DNA of 64,000 nt from Pocillopora damicornis (GCF_003704095.1 NW_020845487.1:62001-126000), one strand, 5' to 3'; shown: positions 34,425-54,929, counted from the first letter of the stretch. Made by a program: numbers and translations. The notes: a model not told the origin generated them from the sequence alone.

Positions 34425-35054
34425 CTATCTCCTTTTCCGACCTAAGTAAACTCCACAATGTGGATGGCCACATTTTGCTTTTGCCTTTAAAGGTTTCATT
34501 TTAAATTTCGGTGGAGTGTATTTAACCTTGTACATTATCATCGGACGCATTAAGCAACATCCAGCGCAACCACAAAGAGGAAAGTAAGGGAAAGATGGCT
34601 TCGGTTTGGAAGACTTATCCTTTACTTTCGTTCCTCGTCCATCTTTCGATGTGTTTTGACTTAAACTCTTCAGACTGCCCAAAGCCTTTTCCAATAGTTT
34701 GCAAACTGTTTTTATCTTAAGTGAGTCTGGATTTCTTGTAGCGACATAGCTTCCGGCTCGTTTCCCCCTTCTTGGGCCTAAACTCCGTTCCACTTTACCA
34801 CTGTGTAGACGTCTTGTGCTGTTGCAAGAACTTAAGCCAATTTTCTGTGAATTTTTTTCTTGAGAAAATGCGGTAGAAGCACAGTTAGTCTCAGGAGTTT
34901 CACAACCAACGCTTTCGATTGCTGAACAATAGCCAGGTTGAGTTGAAACAATGCTCAGGCAACAAAACGTTAAACGCCAGAGACTTTTCTTAAGCCATTT
35001 TTTCGTCGACAGCGATGTCATCCTCTTATTTTTTCTTGAAATATCTTTCATCAT
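34425..35054 (-). CDS. Gene D: 209-aa probably secreted protein with a degenerate copy of the gene E Cys-domain tail
   Basis: Hydrophobic stretch SLWRLTFCCLSIVSTQPGYCS near the N-terminus. C-terminal CGCAGCC...YTPPKFKMKPLKAKAKCGHPHC matches CDPPKFKFKPLKPKPMCHCP of the gene E cassettes. TATAAA (minus) about 50 nt upstream at about 35104-35109. Confidence 0.65.
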   Translation of the reverse strand: MMKDISRKNKRMTSLSTKKWLKKSLWRLTFCCLSIVSTQPGYCSAIESVGCETPETNCASTAFSQEKNSQKIGLSSCNSTRRLHSGKVERSLGPRRGKRAGSYVATRNPDSLKIKTVCKLLEKALGSLKSLSQNTSKDGRGTKVKDKSSKPKPSFPYFPLCGCAGCCLMRPMIMYKVKYTPPKFKMKPLKAKAKCGHPHCGVYLGRKRR

Positions 35055-37010
35055 CTAGCCTCTAAGTTCCAAGTGAATCCACTTATAGAGCTCTAGTGTT
35101 TGGATTTATATTTAAGTAAGCTCAAAGGAATTCAATTGTATTGTTTACTACGGGTAGATTTCACAATTACTGATACATATACATATGGATTTGCGAATGC
35201 ACAAAATGGAAAGTTAAATGTTATTTCAGAGCCTTTAATTCCTTTACAATTTCAAAAAAGTTTACGAATCGCCGAAAAAAATCAACTCATGCTCTTCCAC
35301 TCTCTGTTTTATCGCTACCCGTTTTCCACTCTTACCCTACACCCACCAGCATCAATTCTAAGATTAAATACTTTTGGTGAAAAAACCTTTCTACGAAAAA
35401 GCAGTTCCATATTGCAAACTCCTTGACAGTAGATTACAGGGGAAATCATTACAACTTGCACGAGTAGAGGAAACGTAAGTCTTCACTGCTTAAAATTATT
35501 TATTAGACAAAATGTGATTTTTGCAGTATGTATCGTTAAGGCAGGAGGAAAACTTTTAAGACCTTAAAGCTAAATTTTTTTTCTAAGCCTTAACTATCTG
35601 CGCTGCAAAACCGAATCTTCCGTTCGCTAAACGTCTTCAACCTGCATCTTCGACATTAAAGCGCGTCTTTTTTTTTCGTTAGAGTCAGTAGATACCCATA
35701 GCAGATGGCAGCTAGCAGATAGATAGCAGCTAGTATGTCATTAAGACGCTGTTGATTTTCTTTTACAAAGCTAACAGGATTCCTTGTTTTTTCCAGCGAC
35801 ACCGGACCAACTTCAACAGCACGGTCTATTTCGGGGTAAAGTAAAGTCTTTTATTGCTACACACAGGTGGTTAAAATAAGTCGAGAATGCAATAAATCAG
35901 GACCCTGGCAACATCAGCAGATAAAGTGGATTAACGTTTGGGATCAAGAAATACATCAAGAAGAGGACATATGGAGGCGTACTGCAAAGGCAACAGATCA
36001 TCTAAATGTAAGTTGTGGAAAGGCGACAAGCTCAGTTTTATTTTTTTCCAAGTAAAGTTGTCATGCAAGTTTCTGTATGGGTTTGAACGAGAGCTTTAAA
36101 TTTGTGAACATTGGCAACAAGAAGTACACCCTTAAGTTCGGTTGATTGACACGATGGCCTGCGTAACAAGTTTATGAATACTCCTATTAACTTGATGTCT
36201 GTTAACTGAAAGATATAAAGTATAATGTCGGTGATGTTATACAGTAAGCGTGCAACCCATCTCTCCATAAACGTCCATGGTATTAAGCCTTCTTCTAAAC
36301 AAGAGAAAAATATTTCTATGGCCATAACTTAAGTTATTTCGAAAGGATTATGGATTGTTTCCTGATAAAGTTAAAAAAGGGGACTTGGGGTGATCCGAAA
36401 TCATAACTGCAGCAACAATAATTCAATATTTTTAACAGAAATGCACACATCATATTAAATGCTTGTTTAATTTATTAACCAGTTCTCAGTTGTATCACTA
36501 AATAACATGCACAGCTATCGAAGACTTTTCTCCGACGTGAATAATATCCATTTCAATAAAGCATTGATGTGTTCCATATTAGCTCCATGTTGCCTCGGGC
36601 GTGCTGAAGTGAAGCTGCTTGTTTTTGATCTCTCCGAATCCGAGGCTTCTTTAGAAGTTATGAGATCTGGAAAAATAGGGAAGAGAAAAATATGTCATTA
36701 TATTTTTTATGTTTGAGGCACTTTTCGTATTTCTTATATGAAAGAAAAAGAATATTTTTCTAAGTTTTTCTTTTGTGTCAGTGTCATGTTTAACGTGTAT
36801 ATATGTTTCTATGACAGAGGAGAGAAATAAGAATGTTGATTGTAAAAAGAGTAATCTATCAAAATAGCTAAAACGATAACTTTCTGCCATGGTAGAGCCA
36901 TTGTGCAGTAAAGCAAACTTTTGAGGTGACATCTTTTGGGTTACAAACTGTCGGCTTTCTTTAGAAATTATGGGCCGCTTATTTAATCAAAGTTTAGCCG
37001 TTGTTTAACA

Positions 37011-38163
37011 AAATCGTGTTTAGATTAATTTTAAGTTTCGCTTGACCTTTCATCCAAAATTTTTTGGGAGGGATGTCTGGATAGCAGATAGCTATCAGTG
37101 GAAGGACAGTTATTTAATTAAATCAGCCCTCTGATAGAAAAAGCTTGAGGCCCAATGATTGCGTAAAACCGTGGTTTGGTTTATACCCCTTGTAAATAAC
37201 CGGCCCTATCTCTCCACATATTAGAAGTACCTTGCTGATCAGTTTAAAATGCTCTTGGGATAGGCATCATTGGAACACCATTGAAAAATGGGTTGTAGAA
37301 TGGTGCATAGCCATGACTGTATGGAACCGGCACAAAAGGAGATCGCTGTTCTTCCATCAAGCTGCGTTTCACAGGGCCTCGCTTACCTTATCACAAGTGT
37401 AAAGGACACAATGGGTGAATTAGTGACTGATCTGAGGTGAACAATTATTCCCATGAGAGATTGACTTTCTGCCACCTTGCGCCTTCCGTCTCAAGATAGC
37501 TCGCTGGCTAGCTTCTCTGGTCAAATTTGGAGTTCAGGGCTCCGATCTGAGCTTAGTAAATTTCTGCGTGGACACAAATGTCTACATTTTCACTTGCACT
37601 TTACAATGGGAAATAAAATAGTCACGTCTTACTTGATCTTCTTAAACAGTGATGTCCACAGGCTGTATGGTGACTGTGTGGTGATGGGCAGTGGCACACA
37701 GGCTCAGGTTTCAGCGGTTTGAACTCAAATTGGGGTGGTGTACAGGTACAGCAGCAGGGCCACATGCATGGCCACTTGCACTTTCCAGGAGGGGTCTTTT
37801 CTTTACAACATTCACAACCAGGGTTGTTCACAGTGGCGCCAAATTGACAGGGAAACGTGAGACTTGGGCAGCAGCCGGTGTTACATCCTGAGCAAGTGAT
37901 TGGGGCACCGAATCCTCCTTTGCAGTTGGAGCACATGGTACCGGGAGCACACCAGTCGTTTGGTCCACAGCATCCGCATCCTCCGCATCCTCCGCATCCT
38001 CCGCATCCTCCACATCCACCGCATCCACATCCTGGTCCGTAGCCTCCCATGTAATCACAGCCGCCAGAATCGAAGGAATCTCCGCATCCCCAGCATCCGC
38101 CACATCCGCAGCGTTTTTCTGCAAGTATTTAAATCGTGTTTAGATTAATTTTAAGTTTCGCTT
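37011..38163. repeat. Perfect 33-bp direct repeat (37011-37043 and 38131-38163) bracketing the coding exons of cassette 5
   Basis: aaatcgtgtttagattaattttaagtttcgctt occurs at both positions, 1,120 bp apart. Confidence 0.9.
37244..38118 (-). CDS. Gene E cassette 5: Cys-domain exon 37633-38118 plus peptide exon 37244-37386 (recent paralog of cassette 3)
   Basis: 486-nt phase-1/1 exon, nearly identical to cassette 3 in the Cys domain. Next exon SKRGPVKR-SLMEEQRSPFVPVPYSHGYAPFYNPFFNGVPMMPIPRAF* (weaker AAG acceptor). UTR exon from 36666 is similar to that of cassette 3; AATAAA at 36471-36476. Confidence 0.8.
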
Positions 38164-38793
38164 TGCTGTTGCGTTTTTTCTGCGTGCTGTTAATAATATC
38201 ACTTGGAGTATCAAGAAAATGTGCCTCAAGTCCCAACCAACTTTTCATTAATGCGTGTAAGTGCACTTCTATCATGCAAAATTTCCAGACTTACCGGTTT
38301 TGGGTAGCGTTAAAAAGACACCATGATATTTCCCCAAGGTGTTTTATTTTTCCGGTGTAGTGGTTATCTTAATTGTATTTCAAGTTAAACGCAACGAACA
38401 AGCGTGCACGAGTTAAGTGATACTTTATTCAACCTTTATTACATATTCTTTTGATAATTAAGGAAGTTATAGTTGTTGAATCTGTATTCTTCTTGTGTGA
38501 TTAAAAGGTAGCCATGGCTGGAAATTTCTGGAGTGCTATTTGATGGCAATCCTACAAAACACAAACCAACATCGTTGAAATATGAGGTTAAAACATCAGA
38601 GTTTCCTTTAAGAAACATTCTTTGAAATTTACCCATCAGCTTCTGTTACGTTTTGAAACGAACCACAGCTTCGGAATACAGAGAAGTGTTGAATTCTACA
38701 AGTCAAATCTATAAATGTTGTTACAGCGTTTTTTGATCGTAGGAAATGATTTGTAATTTACCTTGTTTGCCTTTGATATCATGATCCTTTGAG

Positions 38794-40076
38794 TTATACT
38801 TGTTGACTGGGCTCTGAATTACTTGGAACTTGAAGAAAACCTTGAGGCTTGATTTGAAGGCCGTTGACAATTGGGAAACTGAAGGGAGCAAACACTTTTG
38901 GAAACGGCCCGCCAAGGGTATCCAGTAGGTTTCGTTTGACAGGACCTTGATTATCTGTTGTGGTGAAAAAATGCAGTTAAAGTCAGCTTACGAGGTAGGA
39001 GACTCATCCTGCCTGGACTTATTGAATTCAGTGAGTTCAGTTCAGGAGCGTAAACGGAATACAAGTCCATGGCAGGCTAGCCTTTATATTGCGTCATGTT
39101 CCCTTTAAAGGTTTAAGTTACCTATTGATAGACTTTGTGGAGGAGAGGCTCAGTGACTTACCAGAGAAAATCACACATGTCCTTGCTAGTTTCGCCTGTT
39201 TCTTAAAAACTGGTAATTTTACACACTCTAGGCAATCGTTTCAATCCAAATCTTAAGTATAGAAATAAGGCTCTTTGCTCAGAATTCTCTCAATTTGCTT
39301 TAGTTGCGTCGTATTTTTATTATGTGGATTTAAAAAGTATCAATTTCTTGCTGTTATATCCAAACATTGAAAAAAAAAACCAACAGCAACAAAAAATAGC
39401 TTTACAGGACCCGTAATCAAGAAGCAGGTCCTATTGCTTGAACCTGGATCCATTATAACAGAGTTAAGCGTCCTAACCAGGAGGCCACCACGCCTCGCTT
39501 CTGGGTGGAATTTTATTGAAAATAAATTCGTCTCCGTCAAGCGATGGTGTTTTTTGTCAAAATTGAAAAGTAGATAATTTTTTGAGGTTATAGAAACGTG
39601 TGTTGTGAATAGTAGAAAGAAGTGCGGCATACTTGTTTGTGATTGGTGTAATCTGTAGTAACGCTTGTGTGGACAGTGGCACACTGGCTTGGGCTCCAGA
39701 GGCTTAAACTTGAACTTAGGTGGATCGCACTCGCAGCAGCATGGCCACATGCATGGCCAGATACATTTTCCTTTGGGAGGCTTCTTCTTACAGCACTCAC
39801 AGCCTGGATTGTTGACAGAAGCGCCAAACACACAGGGGAATGTAAGACTCGGGGAACATCCACAGTTGCAGCCCCCACATCCTATAGGTGGTCCAAAGCC
39901 TCCCTTGCAGTTTGCGCACATGGTACCATCAGCACACCAGTCACATAACCCACCCAGACCGAAACCGTAGCCACCGCAGCCACCGAATCCACCATAGCCA
40001 CCGTAGCCGCCGAGGCCACCACAGCCGCCACAGCCACCAAAGCCGTAACCACCGCAGCGTTTTCTTCCGCGTTTAC
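38794..40076 (-). CDS. Gene E cassette 4: Cys-domain exon 39633-40076 plus peptide exon 38794-38954
   Basis: 444-nt phase-1/1 exon GKRGRKR-CGGYGFGGC...CSPSLTFPCVFGASVNNPGCECC...CIWPCMWPCCCECDPPKFKFKPLEPKPVCHCPHKR... Next exon NNQGPVKR-NLLDTLGGPFPKVFAPFSFPIVNG...SQQV*. UTR exon acceptor at 38642; AATAAA at 38424-38440. Confidence 0.8.
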
Positions 40077-41242
40077 CTATTGGAAACAAAAGACACACTT
40101 TAAGTTTTTAGCTTCTCTCGGTCAAGGTCTGTCAGTTAATGCACTGTTAAGAAACTATTACTTAAACTTATTAATAAGAAGAAAAAAGGAAGAATCAATT
40201 AGTTTTATTAAATTCTTAAGTACTCAATCTAGCGATAGAAGTATTAGTTTTTATACTTATGGGCAACATTTTTTGGTGCGTCCCTAGTGTTAAGCATATT
40301 TTGTACGCTACTTAATAAAATCATGTTAAAGAATGAACATGATTACGTTATCAAGTATTGATTAAGTTAAAATTACTTTTGCCTTACAAGGTTTACATTA
40401 CATTATGTTGTTAGCTGCTTATTAGCCAACAATTGTTTTAGAGGCCGGAAGAGTTGTGAATTGACGAAAGGTTAATGACTCGAGATTTGTGAATAATGAT
40501 ATGGCGAGAAGTAAGCTTTGCATATGATAGATGTAACATCGTCACAAGGCAAATGTTATTGTTTATGGTAAACGTGAAAATGATGTGTGATACCTGATGA
40601 ATGTGAATTGGACGTCTGTGAAATTGTGCCATTGAGTGTGCTTCCAAATCCATTTCTAACCAACTTACTTCTTTCATGGAGAAAAAGTTATCTGTAGATT
40701 AAGCCACCGTCATCACAGTCGGAGAAAGGTATATTCCCCACAAAAAAATTATTTTATTTAACCTGAGAAGACCGAGCATTACAAGGGTAATGTCAGCAAG
40801 TTAAAAGTGCTGTAAGGGAAGGTGTAGTTTATAACTTTTTATAATAAAACCACACAGAATACCGATATCATATTAAACCTTTGCTCAATTTATTGACCAG
40901 TATTTCAATATTATAACTGAATAGTATGGAAAGTCATCGAAAATATATATTTTTTTCTCTAAATTAATAATTTTTTTTGTCAACGAAGCGTTCATTGTTC
41001 ATCATTCGTTCCGCATTGCCTTAGGCGTGCTGATTTGAAGTTGCGTGTTTTCATCTCTCCATATCCGAGGCTCCTTTTCAAGTTACGAGATCTGTTGTGA
41101 TAAATTGGGAGATATACGTTAGTTTGGGTCATTGTGTTGTGACAAAAAATTATGGTCGAAATGGTGGTGAGGCTATGTAGCGCTTGAACGATTTGAATTC
41201 ACGTTTAAGTTACAGATATATAGAAATACCTAGTTGATCAGT

Positions 41243-42140
41243 TTAAAATACTCTTGGAAAAGGCATCATTGGTACACCATTGAAGAATGGGTTGTAGAAT
41301 GGTGCATAACCGTAATTGTATGGGACTGGCATAAAAGGAGATGGCTGTTCCTCCATTAAGCTGCGTTTCACAGGGCCTCGCTTACCTGAAAACGGGAGCA
41401 AAAGAAACAAATTAAGAATGCGTTACCTATTGCAGGGGAACAATTATACTGAGTAATACAATTTTTTCCCGTGGCAAATTTAGCCACACAATTAAAAAAA
41501 AGAACAGTCTCAATTCAACAGCTTCTTAAAGCAAAGCTGTAGCTTATCCTCTACCTCTCGTAAAGCTTGCAATTAGACACCTGTCTTTTCTGACGAGACG
41601 GTTTGCTCTCCGTTTTACGTTTACTTTCCTGGAGAGAACCCTACTTACTTGATCTTCTTAAACAGTGATGTCCACAGGCTGTATGGTGACTGTGTGGTGA
41701 TGGACAGTGACACACAGGCTCGGGTTTCAGCGGTTTGAACTCAAATTTAGGTGGTGTGCAGGTACAGCAGCAGGGCCACATGCATGGCCACTTGCACTTT
41801 CCAGGAGGGGTCTTTTCTTTACAACATTCACAACCAGGGTTGTTCACGGTGGCGCCAAATTGACAGGGAAACGTGAGACTTGGGCAGCAGCCGGTGTTAC
41901 ATCCTGAGCAAGTGATTGGGGCACCGAATCCTCCTTTGCAGTTGGAGCACATGGTACCACCAGCACACCAGTCGTTTGTTCCACAGGTTCCACAACCACC
42001 ACATCCACAACTGGGTCCGTAGATGCCTCCGGGTGCTCCACCGCAACCCCCTCCCATGTAATCACAGCCGCCAGAATCGAAGGCATCTCCACATCCACCG
42101 CATCCGCCACATCCGCATCCGCCACATCCGCAGCGTTTTT
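41243..42140 (-). CDS. Gene E cassette 3: Cys-domain exon 41649-42140 plus peptide exon 41243-41385
   Basis: 492-nt phase-1/1 exon EKR-CGCGGCGCGG...CCPSLTFPCQFGATVNNPGCECCKEKTPPGKCKWPCMWPCCCTCTPPKFEFKPLKPEPVCHCP...CLRRS. Next exon SKRGPVKR-SLMEEQPSPFMPVPYNYGYAPFYNPFFNGVPMMPFPRVF*. UTR exon acceptor at 41091; AATAAA at 40889-40894. Confidence 0.83.
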
Positions 42141-43137
42141 CTACAGGAATCAGAGTAGTGAAGAATGTGAAAACAAAACCCAACATTTGAGAGTGGAATG
42201 AAATAAAATACCGGTGTGTTTACTTTGCATTCATTTAAATATCCTTTAGTTTACTAAAATGTTAAAATAAGTTTTTACTTTTAATGTTAAATAAGTTTTA
42301 TTGTTGAGTAGCTGTTAAATACTCTCTTCATGCTATCATAATATTGTTTACGGTAAATTTTTGATGAAGGATATTTATTTAGATCTAGTCTGTTTTTTAA
42401 CTTAACAATTCATTTATTATAGCAATATTCAGATCTACGTACCTTAAATATAAGATTTTAGTCGAAAAACTTTGCATCAAAACTTCATTACCAGATAATT
42501 CAACAGATATTTGCATGTTTCAAATTTATTCTTTATTGCAGCTTTGATTGATTTTAAATAGTTTCTAACTACATTATTGTTAATTTATCTATAATTTTGA
42601 CCCTCTAATTAATCAAAACATTTCACTATTGTCCTAATCTTTGATCGCAATTAATGCAATCCGCTGTGGTATGCTGTATGCTTGTCAGGGACATTCTGCA
42701 GAGAGAGAAAGACGAGGAAACTTGAAGTACCTGAACGATTTTAACATCCGATAACAAAAAAGTAGACCCTAGATTCTTCGTTTTGATTTACGCACTATTT
42801 TCTGGGTAGTTTTGCAAGTGGAATGGAAATAAGTCCTTACACTGTGGTCTGTTTCTTATTCCAAAATAAGCATTATAAACATATGATTAAATCCAAGTTC
42901 TCGCGCCCCTCAAAAAACAGCCATAAAATGAGCCCAACTGCAACATGCTGTTTTTTCCTTCAACAAAATCAGTCGTATTTGCATGAAATTGGAGAAAGAA
43001 AATTATTTTTCACAAAAAAAACAACACCAAAAAAAAAAAACAATCCGCATCTACCATTGCTGTAAAGCAGACGTTGACTCTGTCTGGAAGGACCAATATT
43101 AATATCTAAAGAGCTAGAGAGTCTCCACTGACCTTCC

Positions 43138-43899
43138 TCAGTAGTAATAGTATAGATACTGTGGCGGGAATGGTGCCCCATAGTAGAGAGGAACCACAGG
43201 ACTGAAGAAATAAGGAAGCGGTTGAATATCTGTAATGGTTGGTGGAATAAGGCATCGCTTGCTGCAGTGAACTAGAAAAGTAGTTGTGTTAGCACTATTA
43301 GCCAATCTGTCAATCACTTTGGTCACATTTTAATATAAGTGATTCTCAACATATTCAGCATATGAACATATTCTTAAATGAGCTATTCCTTAGAAAAAGT
43401 GTGAAGTTTAACAGAAAAACAACGACAACGGAATTACAAAATTGTACAATTGCATAATAACAGAACGTAATTTTTCTGAGGGTTTCAACGAAAATAAATT
43501 GTTTAGGACCAGCAAGTGAATGATTTAGTCAAATTATACCTCCACTCTTTCGGCAACAATGACAACAACCGCAGCAACCGTGACAGCAACCATGACAGCA
43601 AGTATGGCAATCCTTAGGGACAGCTTTTGGCTTCAAGGGCTTCAACTTAAATTGAGGAACTTTGCACTCGCAGCAGCAGGGCCACATACAGGGCCACTGA
43701 CAGTAGCCTTTCTTTGGTTTTTTTTTACAGCATTGACAACAAGGATTGTCAACGCATGCACCAAACTCAACCGGGAATGTTATCGATTCACAACCATGGC
43801 CGCAGCATCCACAGCAACCGCCACAGCAATGATGGCAAACATGAGGGCATCCAAAGCCACCGCAACAATTGCAACATCCACAAAAGCCTGAACGTCTTG
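43138..43899 (-). CDS. Gene E cassette 2: Cys-domain exon 43540-43899 plus Pro/Tyr peptide exon 43138-43271
   Basis: 360-nt phase-1/1 exon ARR-SGFCGCCNCC...ITFPVEFGACVDNPCCQCC...CQWPCMWPCCCECKVPQFKLKPLKP...CCHCCRKSG. Next exon VHCSKR-CLIPPTITDIQPLPYFFSPVVPLYYGAPFPPQYLYYYY*. UTR exon acceptor at 42730; AATAAA at 42525-42537. Confidence 0.78.
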
Positions 43900-45964
43900 C
43901 TGTTAAGAACGACATGAAATCAGCACGTTACTGGGTTACTTCATTCATACATCTTGTAAAAGCATGCTTAAGACATAAACGCAAGATCAGGCCAGCTTCG
44001 TATTAAGAGATGTTTACTGCCTTAACTTTCATGGCAGACGTGAATGCAGACATGACTAGAAGAAGGTTTCATGTTGACGAAGCTGCCCTGTCTATGGGTT
44101 TGCCAAAGTAAACAATCGAAAATTTTTAAAGGGCAGATCGCAAAAAAAGATACTCACCAGCAATAGTGAAGAGAAGCTGGCGAGTGGTTAGCACACTCAG
44201 CGTCTTTGATGCAACGAGACTGTGTAAGTACACGCATATCTCTTCCTTCCACCAGTAGATATATTTAAAGAAAAGAAGGTTACGAAACTGCACGCTTCTC
44301 ATAGTCAGACTGGAAAAGACTCGGGTTGCGGAAGTGCATTTCCTAAACATTGTGCGAATGAATACTGCTTTGACTAAACGTGGGCAGGGCAGCTATCGCC
44401 AGCTTTTCTTTATCTAAGTTATGTGCTTTTATTTGAGCGACTTATCGAAAGGCACAGAAGCTAAAGAATCCGCGATCCTGAGGTGTGTACGGTAAATGCC
44501 GAAATTCGAAAAGAATGCCATACTCCACGAAAAATACTAACTGTACAAAAAGTATTTCCCTTTTGCATGTTGTAAAGCCAAAAAAATGTGCGGGTAATCT
44601 TTGTTGTTATGCATTTTGTTGCTTTGTAGTAATTGGGATGAATAGTGAAATAAATCTAAACATCCTACAAGAACCCTTCAAGATTCTTGATCTCTATTAT
44701 TACAATTTTAACTAGTAAAGATTTGCATTAACTTTCTTGAAAAACCCCAAGAAAAGAAGATATAGTTTTCTCTAACTGGTCTCAGTTTTTGACAGGAAAA
44801 TAAGATAAGTTACTAATTTTTCAAATTTGATTGCAACCGTTGGTCATGAGGAATGCAACTGAATGGACTATCGGCTCTCATTCATATTTAGAGAACATCA
44901 TTAGTTCATATGTCAGTGTATTCGATTTTAATTGAGTAAGCAGTGGAACTGCTATCTAGTTGAGTAAAAAAACAACAAAACAAAAACAGAAACTACTTGG
45001 ACTGAATGTATCTCTCAGTCCCAATGACTGCTATTTCGTTTTTCAGTGACCGCCCTCCTTTTTTTTTTCTTTTTTCAAATGTCTCACCATTCAATGATTT
45101 TGTAAGACTTAACTGGACTGGAGACTGGAGTTGCTGATTTTTACTAATTATGAAGAACGGCTATATTTATTATCTCAATTATCAAAGGAGCACTTAAGAG
45201 TCGAGGCTCGGATCAATGTGCAATGAGCCTTGAACCATTACCGTCTCAATCATGAGATTGGGTGATATATACGAATGAGAATGGGAAAAGACATTAACCA
45301 CCACAAAATTGATTCATTTTATTTACTAGCATGCGTTCATGCGAGTTGGTAAGCTCATGCAGGATGATGGAATGATGGGTGATTAAATGTTATTTTTCAA
45401 AAATAGTTTCTTCAAGGACACGTTTCTCGCTGGAAACGACTTTTTCTTTCGTAATTGATAATTATTATTTTGCCTCATCGGGGGATATTGCTTTGTTACA
45501 TTTTTTTCTTACATGTAAAAATTATTTCGAGGCTTTCGCTCATTTTAAAAATTGTCCAGACAGAGCATACGTCGAGAAACTACTCCTCGCGAGGTGACAT
45601 TTTGCCAATGATCAAGGGACCTGTAAGATAAAATAAAAGGGGTCAAAGGAAGTAAGTAATAATTATACAAATAGAATAAGTCCAAAAGAGGTTTAACATA
45701 CAAAAAAGTGTTACGCTGCTTTTTTATGATTTACAACTGAAATTCATCTTTAATTCACAAAGGATGACATTTGTTTTACTTGCTAAACGATATATTAGAT
45801 ATGTTGGGAATATAGTGTAGGGTAGTCTCTTTTTGGTCAAAATTTTAATCACCGTCGAGTATACACAATTCAAGTCAAAAAATAAAAAGCCCTACGGCAT
45901 TTCCAAAATGAGTGTTCTCCATTCCAAGGCAAATACAAAATGGCTAGAAAAATATTTTACTCGC

Positions 45965-47034
45965 CTAGTATAATGGAAAGGGGAAGCCACCATTGAATGG
46001 ACCAAGACCGTGCAAATATCCGCCATATCCGTAGGGGCCATATCCGTAGGGTCCATATCCACCGAAAGGTCCATAACCAAGACCGGCACCAAAATCGCCA
46101 TATCCATAACCACCATATCCGAAGCCACAACCGCACCGCTTTTTGACATCAGCTCTTTTTACAGGACCTGAATATTTTAAGAAATAATTAGCACTAGTTT
46201 CATTTTTCTTTCTTTTTTTAATGCTACTGACTTTCCTCTCATTTACAAAATAGTATCAGAAAGCTGACTGAGTTCGATATTTCCAGATTATTTGCTTCTT
46301 TTTCGCGAATGAATATAAATAAATTAATCTTCCTCAGAATCCCACTGAAGTCTTATCAGAAGACCTTTGGGATGTTTTAGTTATTTCAGAGAGTTTCTCT
46401 CACTGAAACGAAAAGAAAAGAAAGAACGAGACAACAAAAAGCAAAGCCTTGGTTTCTCATTTTACGTCCCCATGGGTGATAGATAACACTATATCATCAG
46501 TAAGAAAAAGGTTTTGTCGCCACCTTCCGTGACGTGGAGCTATTAACTTTAAAAGGTGACACTGCTTACTCCTCCGCCAATATGAAGTCTAAAGGAGTTA
46601 CATTCCTTTCAAAAGTAGCTGTTGGAAGATCCACACAAAAAAATAGCAATTTGTCAATGATTTAACGTTACAAACAGAACAAATCAACTCACCTACACTC
46701 TTCTTTCCGCCGCAGCATCCATGAGAGTTAGGACAATGACACATTGGCTTGGGCTTGAGCGGCGTGAATTTAAACTTGGGTGGATCGCATTCGCAGCAGC
46801 AGGGCCACATGCAAGGCCACTGACATTTTCCCTTCGGTGGTTTTTTCTGACAACATTCACAGCACGGATTGTTTACACATGCACCGAAAGTGACGGGGAA
46901 GTTAAGTTGCGGGCAACAACCGCACCCACAGCTTCCACAAGTTTGGGGGCATTCGAAACCGCCACAGCAGTTACCGCAGCCGCAACCCTCACCTGGTTCA
47001 CCCCAGGAACCACAACCACACCGTTTTTCTTGAA
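45965..47034 (-). CDS. Gene E cassette 1: Cys-domain exon 46693-47034 plus Gly/Tyr peptide exon 45965-46167 (377-aa isoform with exon 1)
   Basis: Phase-1/phase-1 exon of 342 nt: VQEKR-CGCGSWG...CCPQLNFPVTFGACVNNPCCECCQKKPPKGKCQWPCMWPCCCECDPPKFKFTPLKPKPMCHCP...GGKKSV. Next exon GPVKRADVKKR-CGCGFGYGGYGYG...FPFPLY*. UTR exon acceptor at 45620; AATAAA at 45318-45323. Confidence 0.85.
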
Positions 47035-48065
47035 CTATTCATGCAATCGGTATCATGCAACATGCAAAGAACAACATGCAAATACCATAAAGTTAGTTCA
47101 TGCAATATACCTTTGCTAGGCAAATATCACACTGATTTGACGGGATTCACATTTTTGGGCAGTTTTGTCAGACATAACTATAGATACTGTAATAAGCAAT
47201 CAAATTAATCACATTACCCCTATTTTCCAATTATTTATGCTAATGTCTAATGTACGGAAAAGATAGACCACGTAACGGACATAATAATTTTCTTTTAATT
47301 TCATTGTCATTGAAACTAAAGCATGAGTCCAATCTCTTGGACTGGACTGATTAAAGAGCCGAGCACAGTGATTTTAAGGTTTTTTAAAATGATTTTCCAT
47401 CCATTGTCAGACCTGATCACCTTTACTTTGAAGAAGACCAAACAACGAAAGTTGTTTGTGCCACAATAGCTGAGCTATACGGGAATTTGGAAAGCAAGGA
47501 TAAGTATAGATGTCTTTTCATCTATTTTGATAAGTAAAAAATGAAGCACAGCCTTGAGTTCATCATTTCTGCTCCATGGATACAGGTGGCTGATCACCTG
47601 CAACCCTTTCATGCTTCGATAAGCGCAGCGAGAAAAATGTTTTAAAATTTTTTTAAAATGAAAATTCTCTGCACTTTATGGTTATCATCAGTGTCGTATT
47701 TTGTACTTTTCTTAATCTGGAAAGTAATTCGTGAATTTTAGTCCTTAAGTCTGTAGACAAAACAATCATAAAACACTAAAAAGTCATGAAAAATTAATGA
47801 TTTTGGCTTCGTGATTAGATATTGTTCTCGAAACTAAAGTTCTGGTCCGCAATCATAGTTTCATTTCTAACCCTTGTTAGAAACTGAAAATGTGAAGGCT
47901 AAACCAAGTTGTTTTACTAAAAAGGTAAAACAGAATCTTTTTTACAATAGCTTGTCTTGAACATGAGTTACTGATATTTGAAAGTTATTTCAAATATACT
48001 CTACATATAGTTAAAATACATGATCATTAGTTAACGAGGTATTAAAAAATAGGAAATGATGTTAC

Positions 48066-48654
48066 CTTGTGTGCTCTTCACTGCCTTTTTGTCATCATCC
48101 ACGGAACGCTTTTCGGGTTTGTCCTTCTCTTTGTCTGAATCTTCAATCACAACTCCTTTGATTTTTCCATTACCGCTTCCCTGAAGCACCAAATGCTCGG
48201 AATCAAGATCTACATTTTCTTCCCCAGACGAGTCTTGATCGTTCTGTTGATCATTGAGATCAGGTTCCTCTTCTTTGTCGTCTTCCTCTTCTTTATCGTC
48301 TTTCTTCTCTTCCTCGTCTTTTTTATCATCATCATCATCCTTACTTTCTTCGTCTTCCTTCTTGTCATCATCATCTTTCTTCTCCTCGTCTTCCTTTTTG
48401 TCTTCATCGTCCTTATCGTCTTCGTCGTTTTTGGTTTCATCTTCCTTCTCTTCATCTTCCTTACTTGCTTCTTCATCCTCTTCATCCTTGGCCTTGTCGT
48501 CGTCACTGGCCTCTTCAGCTTTCTCCTTAGCCTCCATTACCTCCATAAAATTTTCATTTTCTAACTTGTAAGATGATGCTACAGGAACTGCTGTTGCTTG
48601 ATAAAGCACCACTAACAAAGTGAAAACTACCAAGAGCCAGGTAGTTTTCATCAT
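48066..48654 (-). CDS. Gene E exon 1: signal peptide plus Asp/Glu/Lys-rich propeptide, shared leader of the cassette array
   Basis: MMKTTWLLVVFTLLVVLYQATA-VPVASS, about 90 aa of D/E/K runs, then ...PEKRSVDDDKKAVKSTQ G|gtaac (phase-1 donor at 48066). Confidence 0.88.
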
Positions 48655-51071
48655 CTTCCACTGCTGTTTTTCCTAGACCTTTGGCACGGCTTATGGGAGT
48701 ATCGTAAACAACAACAATGTAACTAACTCTTCTCGCCTCGATCTATTGTCTCATAAACTGCCATAAAATGACTTGAAATTAGGTAAGATTTGAAATATTT
48801 ACGTCGTGAATTTTGGTTGGCTAGGGTGCTCTATTGTGTGATTACTTATTCTTTAATATTATTGGTTAGCAGGTAAAGGGGCAAATTAGGTAACACCTGA
48901 TTATGCGAAATCTGGAAACAATCGATGTCAAGCCTCCGGTCGGCTTTTGTAATAATTAATCCGTAGTTTGTAGAAATCAAGATTTGCATTTTTTCCTTAA
49001 GTGTGTCATCAAAAGAAAGAACTAGTGAAACATATCTTCCAGCGTCCTCCATAGCATAAAACGCCATTTTTAATTTCAAAATTCCTATTAATTTTTTAGT
49101 GCTTTCTTTTCTTGTTAACTCGAGCATTAAATAGTGCACCTGAATGGCTGAATACACCACCTATCGCAAGCGTCAAGCTTGAAGAGACATCTATTTATTG
49201 CTTTGTGTTTAAAATTAACCACATGTGACCATTTTGCCACAAATATAAGTCAGTAAAGTTAAAACCACTATTTGATAAAAAATGGGGTATTCTAAGACTG
49301 AAAACCTTGTAAGAAATTGTAATTGATCTGTTCACGGCTTATCGTGGCGAGCAAAGAGAGAGGAACTTCCATCTGTGCTATAGATTAAGGGAATGACAAT
49401 TGAAATTCAGAAGTCTAGCGGAGCCCTGAAACAATATCAAATCTAGCGATACGAACTAATGTGAAAAGTAATAGCGTCATAGGTTAAAAGAATTAAAAGC
49501 TGTTTTTGTTTGTAATTTAGTCAATGTACTATCCCCACTTTTCAAGCTAAACAAATAAAAAAGAAATTGAAACACTTCAATGAAAAAATGCAAATTCATC
49601 ATCGAATAAGCGCTAAATGTGGAACTTTTTGCGAAAAAAATCCAGACTTCATGAAAGTCATCCGAAGTGTAACTGAAAAGTGGAAAAACCTGAACAGTGA
49701 ATGGTGCCCCTAGTCCTCTTTCTCGTTTCCGCGACTTCCTTGGAAACTCCTGTCTTAACATGTTTGTATATATACTTTCACAGTTATCGGAGGTAGTTGA
49801 TCGAAAGTTATTTTGTAGTACAAGTATAACTTTCCTTAAAAATGGACCGAGGATGTCGCTTAATCGTGGTGTAAGTGTCGCTCTTAAGGATATAGAAGTC
49901 GTTCCTTTTTTATCTTACATACTTAGGACACCTAAGGAGAAAAAAACGGCGAGGAGTATTGGATGTCTCTCAGTTGATGATTATTGAAAGTATCTTTGTT
50001 ATAATTTGAGTTTGTGAATTCAATTCTATTGTTATTCATGTCAACAGTAGACAAAATAAGTCCACATATAATATTGACGCGTATAAAAACAGAATGACCA
50101 AGTCATATCTTGTGTTCAGCGCTGGTACCTGTAAGAATTAATTGCTGTACCACCACATGCTGTCAACATCCACATCAACCAACCCTTAGAGGCTAATTTC
50201 AATTTTTTTCCTCTGCTGCAAAGATATTAAGCGCACAAAGTGGAATAATCAGTATAACATGATTTGAATCTGCTCGGCGAAATAATTTTTAAAAGGCCTG
50301 AGTTTCTCCTAGTAATTGCTTTAGTGTATACAAACATTTGGTGATAAACATTTGAAATGTAAGTGTTTGTTTGATGCTTTGAGCGATTTCCAAATTAAGA
50401 AAGTTTTAAGAATGGAATGCTCGGTAAAACCTTTTTCACATCGGACACACTGTGCTTAAATTTCTGTATCGGTAGTTAATTGCCAGTGCGTGTGGTTTTG
50501 CCAAGAATCGTTAACTATCCGACCTGGCTCCACATTTCGAAAGGAAAATTCCTAGGATTTCGAAAGGAAGTTCGACCCCCCCATGCCCTCCTCTAACTCT
50601 GTTGAATTTTGACCTCTGCGTCTAGCAAAATCAAAACCCTATTGTCTCTTTGGTTGTGCAACAGAAGCGATTAAAGAAAAAAAAGAAAGAAAAGGAATGA
50701 CTTAATAAAGAATTCCTAAATAGAATACTTGCAGCTGTCTCGTGACTTTAACCTATGTTTGTTTCTAATTAGTGTAATCTCAAATTCACGATATATCTTA
50801 AAGGTGGTTTTGCTATTACCGTATTAGGGGACGAAATCAGTTGCAGAATTTTTGAATGTGAACCTGCGGATAATTGTTACTTAAAATGTATTGTCAGACA
50901 TATGAGTAAAAATAGACACAAACATCACTACTATGCTAATTGTTTATTTCATGTCGACCCTTCTGTTACACATGATCATATATACAATTTTATGACGATA
51001 TTGTGGCACTTAAGGAGGTTTGTTTTTTGATATTTTGTTACTAATAATCGGTAGACTTAAATGACCATCTC

Positions 51072-52439
51072 TTAGTGATGTTGTGGCTTGGAGTGTGCAG
51101 CAGCGATCTGCGGATTGACAACAGCAGGCGTCCTCTCTGAGGCATTTGACTTCTTACAGCAACAATGGCAGCAGCAGGGACAGCAGTGGCAGCAGTGGCA
51201 GCAGCATGGGCAGCAGCACTCGTGGCAACAGCAACAACATGGTTCGCAGCAGTGGCAGCAACAGCAGCATGGTTCGCAGCAGTGGCAGCAACAGTCGTGG
51301 CAGCAACAGTCGTGGCAGCAGTCACAGCAACAGCATTTCTTGGACCCTTTTCCCTTTCTTACCGCTTGACTTCCATCGGCTTGCGCCATTATTGGTGCAA
51401 CAGCCAAGATACCCGGGTTATCTGACACTTGCGCTGCTACAGTTGAGTGTCCTGTATTTGAACGAGAGTTGCATTTGCAATCACATCGCCTCGTGATGTT
51501 TGTCTGAATACTGCCACTTTCTGCATCTTTTTGGTTCTTGCATTTGCAATCCTCTGGCCTGCAATTCTTTATCGTTGCGCTTGAAGAGTCACAGTTACAT
51601 TTTCCTTTGTCTCTCAGACACTTTTTTGCGTCTCCTTGCGAGCAATCACACTTTCCGTCGATATTTTGTTCCTCTTTTGCTGGAATTTCACAAGTGCATT
51701 TATTGGCATCGGCCTCTTTCCTTTCGTCTAAAATAAAAAAAAAAAATACAGGTTTAACATACGATCAACTTCATGCTAACCAAAGAAACGGTCACAAAGG
51801 TTTGACGTTGTTTTATATGGAGAAGAAGTAAGTTGGTCAACCCTCTGGAGGGTATGCAAATCAACAAGGTACTTTCAAAGCAAACCCCGTCGAGGAAAGT
51901 AGTGAATGAGATACCAGTAAGTCTCTTGGCGAGTGTTTAAGAGTTCTTGTGTGTCAACACGCTCCGAATTTGACCCAGCATAATATATTAATTACTTTAA
52001 AGCCAATGGCTTATTGTAACTTTATTTTCTCATAAATCAGGTTTAAAGTAACTTATCTTCTTATATCTTATCAAAATTCGTTCTTTTTAATTTTATGGAA
52101 TGTTTTGGGTTGCTTTCTGTGAACAGCCGCACTAATTGTCGTTGGAGTTTGCTTGTTTTCTTATGATCGTGAAAAAAATGATCTGAAACGAAACAATTTC
52201 TCTCTCATTTGAGCACCAAAAAAAATCGACGTTGAAACATCAAAATCAGTTCACTACTGCAGCGAATGATTTCTCGATGGATTCGATCCGTCAACAGAAA
52301 TAAACCCTTGCTATGAAGTTATCCTCGTTCTCACTTCAAACAACAAATCCTTACCGTGATTTGCCTTGATTGATTTTCCTTCCACTAATAAGAAAACACA
52401 ACTTAACATAGAAAAACAAAGAAACACTGTCGCCTTCAT
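51072..52439 (-). CDS. Gene F: secreted ultra-high-cysteine Cys/His peptide precursor, 2 coding exons, 246 aa
   Basis: Exon 1 52355-52439 MKATVFLCFSMLSCVFLLVEG-KSIKANH G|gtaag; exon 2 51072-51727 after a ttttag acceptor (phase 1). KCxC-repeat pro-region, then SKK-CCCCDCCHDCCCH...CCC-KKS (59 aa: 41 Cys, 8 His) and tail AAAHSKPQHH*. Confidence 0.85.
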
Positions 52440-54222: not shown

Positions 54223-54929
54223 TTAATGATGGATTGGGCGGGAGGCGGCAGCTGCGGCGGCGGCAGCCAATGCAGCGGAATTGAGTTGTTCCTTGGACTT
54301 TTTGCAGCAGCAGCAGCATGGACAGTGGCAACAATGATGGCAGCAGTGACAGCAGCATGGCTCACAACAGTGACAGCAGCAGCATGGCTCACAACAGTGG
54401 CAGCAACAGCAGCATGGCTCACAGCAATGACAGCAACAATCGTGACAGCAACAGTCGTGGCAACAGTCATGGCAGCAGTCACAGCAACAGTCATGGCAAC
54501 AATCACAGCAGCAATCGTGACAACAGTCATGACAACAATCACCGCAACAGCATTTCTTTGTAGAATTGATTTTTTTGCCGATACCAAGCTGAGGCGATAT
54601 GGCAGATGATAGTTTCACGGCTCCTATTACAGCGGGGTCTGCTGGTCTTGGAATTCCTGCCTTGGCCTCTCCCTCTTTGCATTTACAGTTGCATTTCTTC
54701 CCACCTCCAATTGCGGCAACATTTTTGCATTTTTCTGCTTGTGCCTTACAATCACATTTCTTGGGTTGATCTTTGTGTGTACAGTTCTTGGGTTGATCTT
54801 TGTGTTCACACTTCTTGTTTTCAGTGTACGTACCGCCACATTTTTCGGGCCACTCTGATTTCTTCGTCTCCTCGGTACATTTCTTTTTAGGTTTTCCACT
54901 GCATTCACAAGAATCTTTCACTTTTTGCT
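54223..54929 (-). CDS. Gene G: paralog of gene F exon 2; 5' exon not located
   Basis: Acceptor catgcag| at 54929 (phase 1). KKCxC repeats, then TKK-CCCGDCCHDCCHD...CCCCC-KKS (83 aa: 53 Cys) and tail AAAAAAASRPIHH*. Confidence 0.8.

What the first reader, a model, noticed from the sequence alone, without database searches (positions are those of the whole stretch)
36471..48654. One leader exon feeding five alternative 3' cassettes (constant-to-variable array)
Seen: the only signal-peptide exon is 48066-48654, ending in a phase-1 donor. Downstream are five tandem units, each with a phase-1 acceptor followed within a few codons by KR/RR, a Cys-domain exon whose length is a multiple of 3 (342, 360, 492, 444, 486 nt), a short peptide exon with its own stop, and a 3'UTR exon with AATAAA. 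Because each unit has a stop and polyA signal, they cannot form one polyprotein. Units 3-5 lie only 0.3-0.8 kb from the previous polyA, and I found no leader exon there. Inference: alternative terminal-cassette splicing gives five secreted precursors with one shared propeptide, the mirror image of clustered protocadherin/UGT1 organisation. All coding junctions are phase 1, so Cys exons could also be mixed with other cassettes' peptide exons.
Basis: partly seen in the sequence, partly recalled or inferred. Interest (0 to 1): 0.9.

Follow-up and report, generated by a model that had tools for sequence, protein, structure and literature searches.

The report
One leader exon, five end-cassettes
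A coral gene uses one signal-peptide exon and then picks one of several complete downstream end-modules, making a family of secreted cysteine-rich proteins; sea anemones have the same layout, and it resembles known alternative-last-exon genes.

Summary
On the minus strand one signal-peptide and acidic-propeptide exon (48654-48066, phase-1 donor) is followed by five units. Each unit has a phase-1 acceptor, a KR/RR site, a Cys-rich exon and a peptide exon with its own stop. AATAAA signals lie downstream of each. The genome holds one leader and exactly five Cys domains, all at this locus.

RNA contigs from four studies join donor 48066 to acceptor 47034 (cassette 1, two runs). They also join it to the start of cassette 3 (28 letters unique to 42140 in two runs). 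In the other two runs the contig stops exactly where cassettes 3 and 5 diverge.

The near-identical Pocillopora verrucosa locus carries public models of leader+cassette 2, leader+cassette 3 and leader+cassette 5. Cassette 4 is modelled there as a separate gene without a leader. In the four runs cassette 2 RNA was unspliced at its acceptor.

Porites, Acropora and Montipora show leader-to-cassette proteins. Nematostella has one leader and at least five phase-1, dibasic-site cassettes. So the shared-leader reading holds for four of five cassettes.

The kind is known (alternative terminal exons, as in CALCA or lola). A conserved, single-copy, structured intronic element before cassette 2, enclosing a perfect 5' splice-site motif, remains unexplained.

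The parts
48066..48654 (-). Shared first coding exon. It encodes a signal peptide (by inspection, MMKTTWLLVVFTLLVVLYQATA|V), a 174-aa acidic propeptide (pI 4.1, net charge -48) with an internal KR, and ends in a phase-1 donor AAG|GTAAC.
   Evidence: It is the only copy in the genome. In one run a leader contig ends exactly at 48066 (X6, record 24). In all four runs a contig leaves the genome at 48066.
46693..47034 (-). Cassette 1 Cys-rich exon (342 nt, phase 1 to 1, VQEKR|CGCG...). Its acceptor has the weakest pyrimidine tract of the five.
   Evidence: The joint 48066>47034 is seen in runs X6 and X15. Pyrimidine count is 9 of 20.
45965..46167 (-). Cassette 1 peptide exon (GPVKR|ADVKKR|Gly/Tyr-rich peptide). 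The stop TAG is the last codon of the exon.
   Evidence: The joint 46693>46167 is seen in all four runs.
45059..45620 (-). Cassette 1 3'UTR exon, reached through what appears to be a GC-AG intron right after the stop. AATAAA lies at 45323 and 45171. The spliced contigs of X1 and X6 end at 45059 and 45120.
   Evidence: The exact intron ends are inferred, because the reported joint can shift by up to 3 places.
43971..44419 (-). Conserved non-coding element in the intron or intergenic space before cassette 2. It has a long stem (about 44403-44367 with 44107-44072), an invariant GCTGGTGAGTA (44161-44151) paired in a roughly 10-bp hairpin with ACTCGCCAGC, and two smaller hairpins.
   Evidence: It is single-copy in the genome and present in 8 further coral metagenome contigs. 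There is no Rfam match and no conserved open frame.
43540..43899 (-). Cassette 2 Cys-rich exon (360 nt, ARR|SGFCGCC..., 36 Cys).
   Evidence: P. verrucosa isoform X4 is leader plus this exon. dN/dS is 0.04 against another coral lineage. RNA contigs run unspliced across 43899 in all four runs.
43133..43271 (-). Cassette 2 peptide exon (VHCSKR|Pro/Tyr-rich peptide). Stop TGA is at 43140-43138 and the donor follows 5 nt later.
   Evidence: The joint 43540>43271 is seen in four runs. A loose end at 43133 matches 42695-42668, the start of the 3'UTR exon just after the acceptor AG.
42280..42696 (-). Cassette 2 3'UTR exon, with AATAAA at 42537, 42530, 42418, 42379 and 42302. The 3' end is not determined.
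41649..42140 (-). Cassette 3 Cys-rich exon (492 nt, EKR|CGCGG...).
   Evidence: The 28 loose letters at donor 48066 in X6 and X15 match only 42140-42113. P. verrucosa isoform X2 is leader plus this cassette.
41243..41385 (-). Cassette 3 peptide exon, coding part (SKRGPVKR|Pro/Phe/Tyr-rich peptide, then stop). A GT donor candidate lies 13 nt after the stop.
   Evidence: The 3'UTR structure was not checked with RNA.
40594..40670 (-). 'Exon B' of the separate P. verrucosa cassette 4 model. Together with a donor near 41019 inside the cassette 3 3'UTR region, it feeds acceptor 40076 without the leader.
39633..40076 (-). Cassette 4 Cys-rich exon (444 nt, GKRGRKR|CGG...). Its use with the leader is not shown.
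   Evidence: dN/dS is 0.04. It is modelled as a separate gene in P. verrucosa.
38794..38954 (-). Cassette 4 peptide exon (NNQGPVKR|peptide, then stop).
37633..38118 (-). Cassette 5 Cys-rich exon (486 nt). It is a recent paralogue of cassette 3, and the first 26 nt are identical.
   Evidence: A 408-aa P. verrucosa product runs from the leader ATG to the stop of this cassette. Leader contigs in X1 and X4 stop at the point where cassettes 3 and 5 diverge.
37244..37386 (-). Cassette 5 peptide exon, coding part. The 3'UTR continues towards AATAAA at 36476.

Best explanation
This is one gene of a stony coral. The assembly is 234 Mb and the locus is nearly identical to Pocillopora verrucosa.

What is shown:
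- A single promoter-proximal exon encodes the signal peptide and a strongly acidic propeptide, and ends in a phase-1 donor.
- That donor is spliced to one of several complete terminal cassettes lying in tandem over 11 kb.
- Each cassette consists of a Cys-rich exon, a peptide exon with its own stop, and candidate poly(A) signals downstream.
- A 3'UTR intron within 0-5 nt of the stop is shown by RNA for cassettes 1 and 2. A GT 13 nt after the stop suggests the same for cassettes 3 and 5.

What is inferred:
- The choice is made by alternative last-exon selection. If a cassette's 3' splice site is used, its poly(A) site ends the transcript. If it is skipped, the whole cassette is removed as part of the intron.
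- Distal cassettes seem to take most of the output. Leader contigs are roughly 8-65 times deeper than cassette 1 contigs and some 25-130 times deeper than cassette 2 contigs. Cassette 1 also has the weakest acceptor. Contig depth is a poor measure of expression.
- Every product would be a secreted precursor cut at dibasic sites into three pieces. These are the shared acidic propiece, a basic domain with 24-36 Cys and a conserved core of about 75 aa, and a cassette-specific aromatic and proline-rich C-terminal peptide.
- The proteins are probably structural or cross-linking secreted proteins. That part is weakly supported.

Status by cassette: use with the leader is shown for 1 and 3, modelled in a congener for 2, 3 and 5, and unshown for 4.
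For: - Exon anatomy and phases are confirmed.
- The genome has one leader and five Cys domains, all at this locus.
- RNA contigs from four studies were laid on 42721-48720. They show joint 48066>47034 in two runs. In all four runs a contig leaves the genome at 48066 and continues with the first 26-28 letters of cassette 3. The 28-letter version matches only 42140-42113, and the 26-letter version ends where cassettes 3 and 5 diverge.
- P. verrucosa XP_058950968.2 (isoform X2) is leader plus cassette 3. XP_058950970.2 (isoform X4) is leader plus cassette 2.
- The public gene table of that locus lists products that start at the same ATG and end at the cassette 3 stop (407 aa) and at the cassette 5 stop (408 aa).
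- The order leader-C1-C2-C3-C4 (or a second C3-like unit) is kept in three other coral scaffolds that differ from one another and from the window.
- Leader plus cassette-1-type proteins occur in Porites lobata, including Logan contigs (1.7 kb) whose predicted proteins join leader and cassette 1. Leader plus cassette-3-type proteins occur in Porites lutea, Acropora and Montipora.
- Nematostella has one leader with a phase-1 donor and at least five phase-1 cassettes that open with KR/KK. Public products from one start end at four different places.
- All cassettes are under strong purifying selection: dN/dS is 0.02-0.04 for the Cys exons, including cassettes 2 and 4.
- Charge asymmetry: the propeptide has net charge -48, and the Cys domains have pI 7.9-8.8.
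Against: - No joint 48066>43899 appeared in four RNA runs. The cassette 2 contig runs unspliced from 43540 up to 44439-45026. In X6 and X15 depth steps up about 6-8-fold near 44650, as if an internal start existed.
- Cassette 4's acceptor is used in a public model by non-leader exons, and no leader-to-cassette-4 form was found.
- Contigs cannot show absence, level, strand or mutual exclusivity.
- The public isoforms are automated predictions, and I could not inspect their RNA support.
- Cleavage at the dibasic sites and the function of the products are inferred from sequence only.
- Pfam, the Atlas search and structure prediction gave nothing.
Confidence: 0.85

Rival explanations
1. Mixed regime. 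Cassettes 1, 3 and 5 are the real leader-fed ends. Cassettes 2 and 4 are mainly transcribed from internal starts or as read-through or chained RNA, for example cassette 3's 3'UTR exon > exon B > cassette 4. These RNAs lack a signal peptide and are non-productive or regulatory. Leader-fed forms of 2 and 4 would be rare or limited to a stage or cell type that was not sampled.
For: - The cassette 2 contig is unspliced across 43899 in all four runs, and depth steps up near 44650 in X6 and X15.
- P. verrucosa LOC131778519 models cassette 4 with two non-leader exons and a start codon inside the cassette 3 3'UTR region.
- The Nematostella gene table also has leaderless models inside and just beyond the array.
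Against: - Cassettes 2 and 4 have dN/dS of 0.04, keep their phase-1 acceptors and dibasic sites across coral lineages, and have no start codon or signal peptide of their own. They are therefore translated, and only the leader offers a productive route.
- P. verrucosa isoform X4 is leader plus cassette 2.
Confidence: 0.35
2. Five independent tandem genes, each with its own promoter and an unrecognised private leader exon. The apparent sharing would be an annotation or assembly artefact.
For: - Tandem duplicates commonly carry their own promoters.
- A perfect, conserved 5' splice-site motif sits at 44161-44151 before cassette 2.
Against: - Junctions of the one leader to cassettes 1 and 3 are seen directly in four independent studies.
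- There is only one leader in the genome.
- No open frame reaching the 44158 donor is conserved in four coral lineages, and no joint was seen there.
- Between cassettes, only known exons, UTRs and this one element are conserved with the most divergent locus compared (L006, carrying a Porites-cluster leader).
Confidence: 0.03
3. Trans-splicing of the mod(mdg4) type. Some cassettes, cassette 2 in particular, are transcribed on their own, and the leader RNA is joined to them in trans. The conserved structured element with its U1-like motif would help that reaction.
For: - There is an apparent independent 5' boundary of cassette 2 RNA near 44650 in two runs.
- The conserved intronic element has an invariant 5' splice-site-like motif.
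- From my own recollection, not checked here: a conserved intronic U1-binding motif promotes trans-splicing of Drosophila mod(mdg4) and lola.
Against: - All cassettes lie downstream on the same strand, so ordinary cis-splicing suffices.
- As far as I know, spliced-leader trans-splicing is not reported for anthozoans.
- Nothing requires two molecules.
Confidence: 0.04

Closest known systems
Calcitonin/CGRP gene (CALCA) and the Lymnaea FMRFamide gene: a shared signal/propeptide exon spliced to alternative peptide-encoding downstream exons (from established knowledge, not tested here)
   Same: Common 5' exon(s) carry the signal peptide and N-terminal pro-region. For CALCA, each alternative 3' part has its own stop and poly(A) site; I recall the Lymnaea gene only for its shared leader spliced to alternative coding exons. 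The products are dibasic-processed secreted precursors that share the propiece and differ in the mature part.
   Different: This gene has five tandem paralogous cassettes rather than two unrelated ones. The mature parts are 110-160-aa Cys-rich domains plus aromatic peptides, not short hormones. Whether the choice is cell-type specific is unknown.
Drosophila lola and mod(mdg4): constant 5' exons joined to an array of many alternative 3' terminal exons (from established knowledge)
   Same: A constant-to-variable array. The variable units are tandem paralogues, each with its own stop and poly(A) site. There is a conserved intronic sequence with a U1-like motif.
   Different: Those genes encode nuclear BTB-zinc-finger or FLYWCH proteins and use trans-splicing for part of the array. 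Here cis-splicing is sufficient and trans-splicing is untested.
Clustered protocadherins / UGT1A
   Same: One constant part is combined with one member of a tandem array of variable exons.
   Different: The polarity is opposite. There each variable first exon has its own promoter and joins constant 3' exons. Here one promoter and leader joins variable 3' ends, so the choice is made by splicing and polyadenylation rather than by promoter choice.
Precursors with an anionic propiece and a cationic mature part, such as coral damicornin, Hydra arminin and alpha-defensins (recalled, not compared by sequence here)
   Same: A signal peptide, an acidic propiece, a dibasic site, and then a basic Cys-rich mature part.
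   Different: The mature domain here is far larger and richer in Cys and Gly. No sequence or fold relation was found. An antimicrobial role is not indicated by any test.

Membership tests
Alternative last-exon (terminal cassette) gene | One upstream donor is spliced to two or more alternative downstream acceptors | tested here: met
   Donor 48066 is joined to 47034 and to 42140 in RNA contigs. Congener models add 43899 and the cassette 5 end.
Alternative last-exon (terminal cassette) gene | Each alternative carries its own stop codon and poly(A) site | tested here: met
   All five cassettes have their own stop and AATAAA signals downstream. In X1 and X6 the spliced cassette 1 contigs end at 45059 and 45120, downstream of AATAAA 45171; an X4 contig runs on through this point. 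Poly(A) ends of cassettes 2-5 were not observed directly.
Alternative last-exon (terminal cassette) gene | The alternatives are used exclusively in one mRNA | not testable with these tools
   Contigs cannot show whole molecules. A chained form (cassette 3 3'UTR > cassette 4) is suggested by a congener model.
Variable-first-exon clusters (protocadherin/UGT1 type) | Each variable exon has its own promoter and is spliced to shared downstream constant exons | tested here: not met
   The shared part is the first exon and the variable parts are terminal.
mod(mdg4)-type trans-spliced array | The 3' cassettes are transcribed independently and joined in trans | tested here: inconclusive
   A depth step near 44650 before cassette 2 in two runs hints at an internal start. 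All cassettes are on the same strand, and no test of molecule origin was possible.
Proprotein-convertase-processed secreted precursor | An N-terminal signal peptide and dibasic sites at domain borders | tested here: met
   The signal is judged by inspection of residues 1-22. KR/RR follows every cassette acceptor, and GPVKR or SKR precedes every C-terminal peptide. The same sites are kept in Nematostella. Actual cleavage was not tested.
Minicollagen / cnidocyst CRD proteins | A CX3CX3CX3CX3CC cysteine-rich domain flanking a Gly-X-Y collagen stretch | tested here: not met
   No CRD pattern occurs in any of the five domains. Only chance G-x-x runs occur in the Gly-rich parts of C4 and C5. There are no Pfam hits.
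Any curated protein family (Pfam-A) | A significant profile match | tested here: not met
   The leader and cassettes 1-4 have no Pfam family at E<=1. Cassette 5 was not submitted. The family has only 20 representatives among 1.84 billion, and all named ones are Hexacorallia.

The most novel reading that the evidence does not exclude
The conserved, single-copy, roughly 450-nt element before cassette 2 could be an RNA switch that sets cassette choice. A stem of about 29 bp closes a domain in which an invariant consensus 5' splice-site motif is held in a hairpin. Opening or closing that U1-binding site might decide one of three things:
- whether transcription and splicing run on past cassettes 1 and 2 to the distal cassettes;
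- whether cassette 2 is taken;
- less likely, whether a leader is joined in trans to an independently started cassette 2 RNA.

Together with the Nematostella hybrid isoform, the array would then be an ancient, structure-guided combinatorial system for secreted proteins in a non-bilaterian.
Probability: 0.15. Interest if true: 0.75.

Novelty: new member of a known kind. Interest (0 to 1): 0.5.

Why it matters
- It shows that a constant-to-variable array of alternative terminal exons exists in corals and in a sea anemone with the same phase and processing-site logic, so it probably predates their split. Such arrays are best known from a few bilaterian genes.
- One promoter yields a small repertoire of secreted Cys-rich proteins with a common propiece. 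This family is restricted to Hexacorallia, has no known fold or function, and appears abundant in adult coral RNA.
- The automated annotation of a congener splits the locus into a multi-isoform gene plus a leaderless gene. This analysis tells annotators how to read it.
- The conserved structured element gives a concrete, testable handle on how cassette choice is controlled.

Tried and rejected
Searches that found nothing:
- Pfam on the leader, four cassettes and neighbouring genes gave nothing relevant.
- The ESM Atlas gave no usable hit.
- Rfam on 36000-49500 gave no match.
- Literature searches found no description of this gene or family. This is not proof of absence.

Structure:
- AlphaFold2 on the Cys domain with a 20-row alignment gave pLDDT 41. 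I ran no fold search, because its matches would be meaningless.

Ideas tested and rejected:
- A private coding leader at the 44158 donor. No open frame is conserved in four coral lineages and no joint is seen.
- A 19-nt micro-exon ending at that donor. By hand translation it would shift cassette 2 out of frame.
- A mobile-element (MITE) origin of the inverted repeat. The element is single-copy in the genome and lies at the same position in distant corals.
- A docking-site model with a conserved partner just after the leader donor. Nothing in intron 1 is conserved with the distant loci.

Limits of the tools:
- Isoform look-ups by the leader returned few public isoforms. The decisive ones surfaced only through cluster listings.
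- P0012 is not on record as a gene product, and one locus had no DNA available.
I repeated it with window references.

Full report
**What is in the sequence**

The window is from a stony coral. RNA runs that hold it are labelled coral or marine metagenome. The assembly has 234 Mb in 4393 contigs. The P. verrucosa locus L009 is collinear, with 92-100% protein identity exon by exon.

- The leader exon is 48654-48066, 589 nt. It encodes a typical signal peptide and a 174-aa acidic stretch (pI 4.1, net charge -48). It ends AAG|GTAAC in phase 1.
- Five acceptors (47034, 43899, 42140, 40076, 38118) follow AG and read in phase 1. Each opens with KR or RR.
- They start Cys-rich exons of 342, 360, 492, 444 and 486 nt, which again end in phase 1.
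- Each Cys exon is followed by a short exon that reads in phase to its own stop. These are 46167-45965, 43271-43138, 41385-41243, 38954-38794 and 37386-37244.
- Four of these short exons open with GPVKR. Cassette 2 has SKR instead.
- AATAAA signals follow every unit.

**More than chance**

A six-frame search of the whole assembly finds one leader. The second hit is a weak acidic match at E=1.6e-4. The same search finds exactly five Cys domains, all at this locus.

The Cys domain has no Pfam family. It has only 20 representatives among 1.84 billion clustered proteins. Every named one comes from Hexacorallia: Pocillopora, Porites, Acropora, Montipora, Desmophyllum, Actinia and Nematostella.

The conserved core is about 75 aa. 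Its pattern is C-x-NC-[CK]-GGF ... FP-x-FGA-x-V-[ND]-NP-x-C-[EQ]-CC ... WPC-[ML]-WPCCC-x-C-x-x-P-x-F-x-[FL]-x-PL-x-P ... CHCP.

**RNA evidence on this sequence**

I had one read-laying run and used it on 42721-48720. That stretch holds the leader and cassettes 1 and 2. I laid RNA contigs from four different studies.

Joints with GT..AG ends on the minus strand:
- 48066>47034 in X6 and X15. The leader side is 30 letters, as expected when a de Bruijn contig breaks at a branch point.
- 46693>46167 and 43540>43271 in all four runs.
- 45965>45620, read here as a GC-AG intron that starts right after the stop.

Other observations:
- A loose end at 43133 matches 42695-42668. That is the start of cassette 2's 3'UTR exon, just after the acceptor AG.
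- In all four runs one contig leaves the genome exactly at 48066. It continues with letters whose reverse complement is the start of cassette 3.
- The 28-letter version (X6, X15) occurs only at 42140-42113. The 26-letter version (X1, X4) fits both 42140 and 38118 and stops exactly where the two cassettes diverge.
- In a de Bruijn assembly, a contig ends that way when both continuations exist. I therefore take this as a hint that leader>cassette 5 also occurs. This is inference.
- In X6 a leader contig ends exactly at 48066 (record 24). That again indicates a branch point at the donor.
- Leader contigs have mean word depth of roughly 970-2000. Cassette 1 contigs have 30-127 and cassette 2 contigs 19-41. 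The tool warns that contig depth is a poor measure, so I use it only as a hint that most leader-containing RNA goes to the distal cassettes.

**What the RNA did not show**

No joint 48066>43899 appeared. In all four runs the cassette 2 contig is spliced at 43540>43271. Upstream it runs unspliced across 43899 to 44439, 44636, 44675 or 45026.

In X6 and X15 depth falls from about 19-27 to about 3 upstream of roughly 44650. That pattern looks like an internal start. Contigs drop minor variants, so this shows only that the leader-joined form is not the main cassette-2-containing RNA in these samples.

**Public models of the same locus**

Cluster listings brought up two P. verrucosa RefSeq proteins with neighbouring accession numbers.
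- XP_058950968.2, isoform X2 (407 aa), is the leader plus cassette 3 and its peptide exon.
- XP_058950970.2, isoform X4 (360 aa), is the same leader plus cassette 2 and the peptide exon I had derived (..RKSG|VHCSKRC..YYYY).

The public gene table of that locus lists two products that start at the same ATG. One ends at the cassette 3 stop (407 aa). The other ends at the cassette 5 stop (408 aa), which is the length expected for leader plus cassette 5.

Cassette 4 is a separate gene there, LOC131778519 (264 aa, no signal peptide). Its acceptor, 40076 in the window, is fed by an exon matching 40670-40594. That exon is in turn fed by a donor near 41019, inside the cassette 3 3'UTR region. This could be a chained read-through RNA or an internal start. 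It gives no productive way to secrete cassette 4.

As I understand NCBI's pipeline, alternative variants are reported only with transcript support. I could not inspect that support.

**Conservation**

- Three coral scaffolds from other sources keep the order leader, C1-type, C2-type, C3-type, then a C4-type or a second C3-like unit. One of them, L006, carries a leader of the Porites cluster.
- Porites lobata has a leader plus cassette-1-type model. 1.7-kb Logan contigs (run type not checked) carry proteins that join leader and cassette 1 (P0049, P0056).
- Porites lutea, Acropora and Montipora have leader plus cassette-3-type 'isoforms'.
- Window against the closest other locus (L005) gives dN/dS of 0.04 for C2, 0.02 for C3 and 0.04 for C4. 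Window against L003 gives 0.03 for C1. The peptide exons give 0.1-0.3.
- All cassettes are therefore kept as protein. This includes cassettes 2 and 4, which have no start codon or signal peptide of their own.
- In Nematostella LOC116617360 the leader ends in a phase-1 donor (GTTTCAG|GTTAGA). At least five downstream cassettes start with a phase-1 acceptor followed within a few codons by KR or KK.
- Public Nematostella products that start at one ATG end at 12634, 15107, 20532 and 23501 in L008.
- Isoform X3 combines the first Cys exon of one cassette with the second Cys exon and peptide exon of the next.

**How it most likely works**

Shown: one donor is joined to alternative terminal cassettes. 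Each cassette has its own stop, and AATAAA signals lie downstream.

Inferred:
- The choice is made by competition among the 3' splice sites, coupled to recognition of the terminal exon and its poly(A) site. A skipped cassette is removed within the intron.
- The proximal acceptor is the weakest, with 9 pyrimidines in 20 against 13-15 for cassettes 2-4. This fits a design that lets the polymerase and spliceosome reach distal cassettes.
- The stop-proximal 3'UTR introns lie 0 and 5 nt after the stop in cassettes 1 and 2, as shown by RNA. In cassettes 3 and 5 a candidate GT lies 13 nt after the stop. All are too close to the stop to trigger nonsense-mediated decay by the usual 50-nt rule (established knowledge).
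- The products would be cut at the dibasic sites into a common acidic propiece, a basic Cys-rich domain (pI 7.9-8.8, 24-36 Cys) and a peptide that differs by cassette. The peptide is Gly/Tyr-rich in cassette 1, Pro/Tyr-rich in 2, Pro/Phe/Tyr/Met-rich in 3 and 5, and Pro/Phe-rich in 4.
- An acidic propiece that neutralises a basic mature part is a known design. Nothing here tests it.
- The surrounding window is a cluster of secreted, low-complexity Gly/Cys/Tyr/His-rich precursor genes. I therefore lean towards a structural or cross-linked extracellular material, with low confidence.

**An unexplained conserved element**

Between cassette 1's poly(A) region and cassette 2's acceptor lies the only deeply conserved non-exonic block of the locus, 44419-43971.

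- It is single-copy in the genome and has no Rfam match.
- It is present in the same place in the three other coral loci. It is also present in eight metagenome contigs found with a pattern search.
- Two long stretches, around AGCTGCCCTGCC...TAGTCAAAG and CTTTGRCAAA...ATAGACAGGGCAGCT, are nearly invariant. They are complementary over about 29 pairs.
- Between them an invariant GCTGGTGAGTA, a perfect 5' splice-site motif, pairs with CUACUCGCCAGC in a 10-11-bp hairpin.
- In nine sequences the changes in that hairpin are almost all C-to-U or G-to-A on one side, which keep a wobble pair. There are 8 kept cells and 3 broken cells.
- Because the arms hardly vary, covariation is weak (one compensatory pair in the long stem). 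A single-sequence fold is not unusually stable (z = -0.98).
- No open frame reaches the motif in a conserved way, and no RNA joint uses it.
- I read it as a candidate regulator of cassette choice, for example gated U1 binding. This is a hypothesis only.

**Comparison with what is known, and verdict**

The kind is known: alternative last exons with a shared signal and propeptide (CALCA, Lymnaea FMRFamide), and constant-to-variable arrays (lola, mod(mdg4)). It is the mirror image of protocadherin/UGT1, not a member of that class.

Automated annotation already carries the isoforms in several species. I found no paper describing the gene or its family.

I file it as a new member of a known kind. 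Cassette 4 remains open, and the main cassette 2 RNA is an unspliced form.

Noticed in passing
window 43971-44419 (-); also L003 13564-14037, L005 14680-15139, L006 14458-14949, L011-L018: A single-copy non-coding element conserved across distant corals. It has two nearly invariant complementary arms (about 29 bp) and an invariant GCTGGTGAGTA held in a hairpin. There is no Rfam match, no conserved ORF and no splice joint in RNA contigs.
   Followed up: yes
window 40594-40670 and about 41019-41132 (-): A P. verrucosa RefSeq model feeds the cassette 4 acceptor from two exons lying in and after cassette 3's 3'UTR region. The first donor reads AG|GCAATG, a GC donor. This suggests chained or internally started transcripts.
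   Followed up: partly
L008 18576-18845, 22538-22687, 23229-23498 (Nematostella): Public isoform X3 combines the first Cys exon of one cassette with the second Cys exon and peptide exon of the next cassette. In Nematostella the Cys domain is split over two exons.
   Followed up: partly
window 45620-45965 (-): Cassette 1's 3'UTR intron starts directly after the stop codon and is best read as a GC-AG intron. In cassette 2 RNA shows a 3'UTR intron 5 nt after the stop. In cassettes 3 and 5 a GT 13 nt after the stop is only a candidate donor.
   Followed up: partly
window 45056-45076 and 48436-48456: Contigs in X1 and X6 link 45076 to 48436 through 38 foreign letters. Long loose ends leave at 45059 and 48456 with letters that are not in the window. 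These may be assembly chimeras through A-rich or GAA-rich low-complexity words, or another allele or copy. Unexplained.
   Followed up: no
window 34425-35054 (-): A 209-aa ORF just downstream of the array ends with CGCAGCC...PPKFKMKPLKAKAKCGHPHC. This is a distant echo of the C-terminal half of the Cys domain. It may be a diverged relative with its own N-terminus.
   Followed up: no
window 17229-19187 (+), 20834-22420 (+), 22716-23258 (+): Neighbouring genes encode a signal peptide, then an acidic propiece, then many Gly/Tyr/Trp/Cys/His-rich modules separated by Lys-rich linkers with KR sites. The locus is a cluster of secreted low-complexity precursor genes.
   Followed up: no
window 51072-51428, 54223-54921, 62377-62793 (-): ORFs made largely of CCH, CCHD and CCEP units (extremely Cys-rich), with no Pfam match for the one tested.
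   Followed up: no
window 32667-32766: A 100-base run of N (assembly gap or mask) lies inside a long Gly/Ala-rich ORF on the minus strand. I left it as it is.
   Followed up: no
P0065 (Desmophyllum pertusum OS493_025274): A deposited gene model reads a cassette-3-type unit and a cassette-4-type unit as one 379-aa protein without a leader. It is probably a prediction artefact, and it shows how this architecture confuses gene finders.
   Followed up: no
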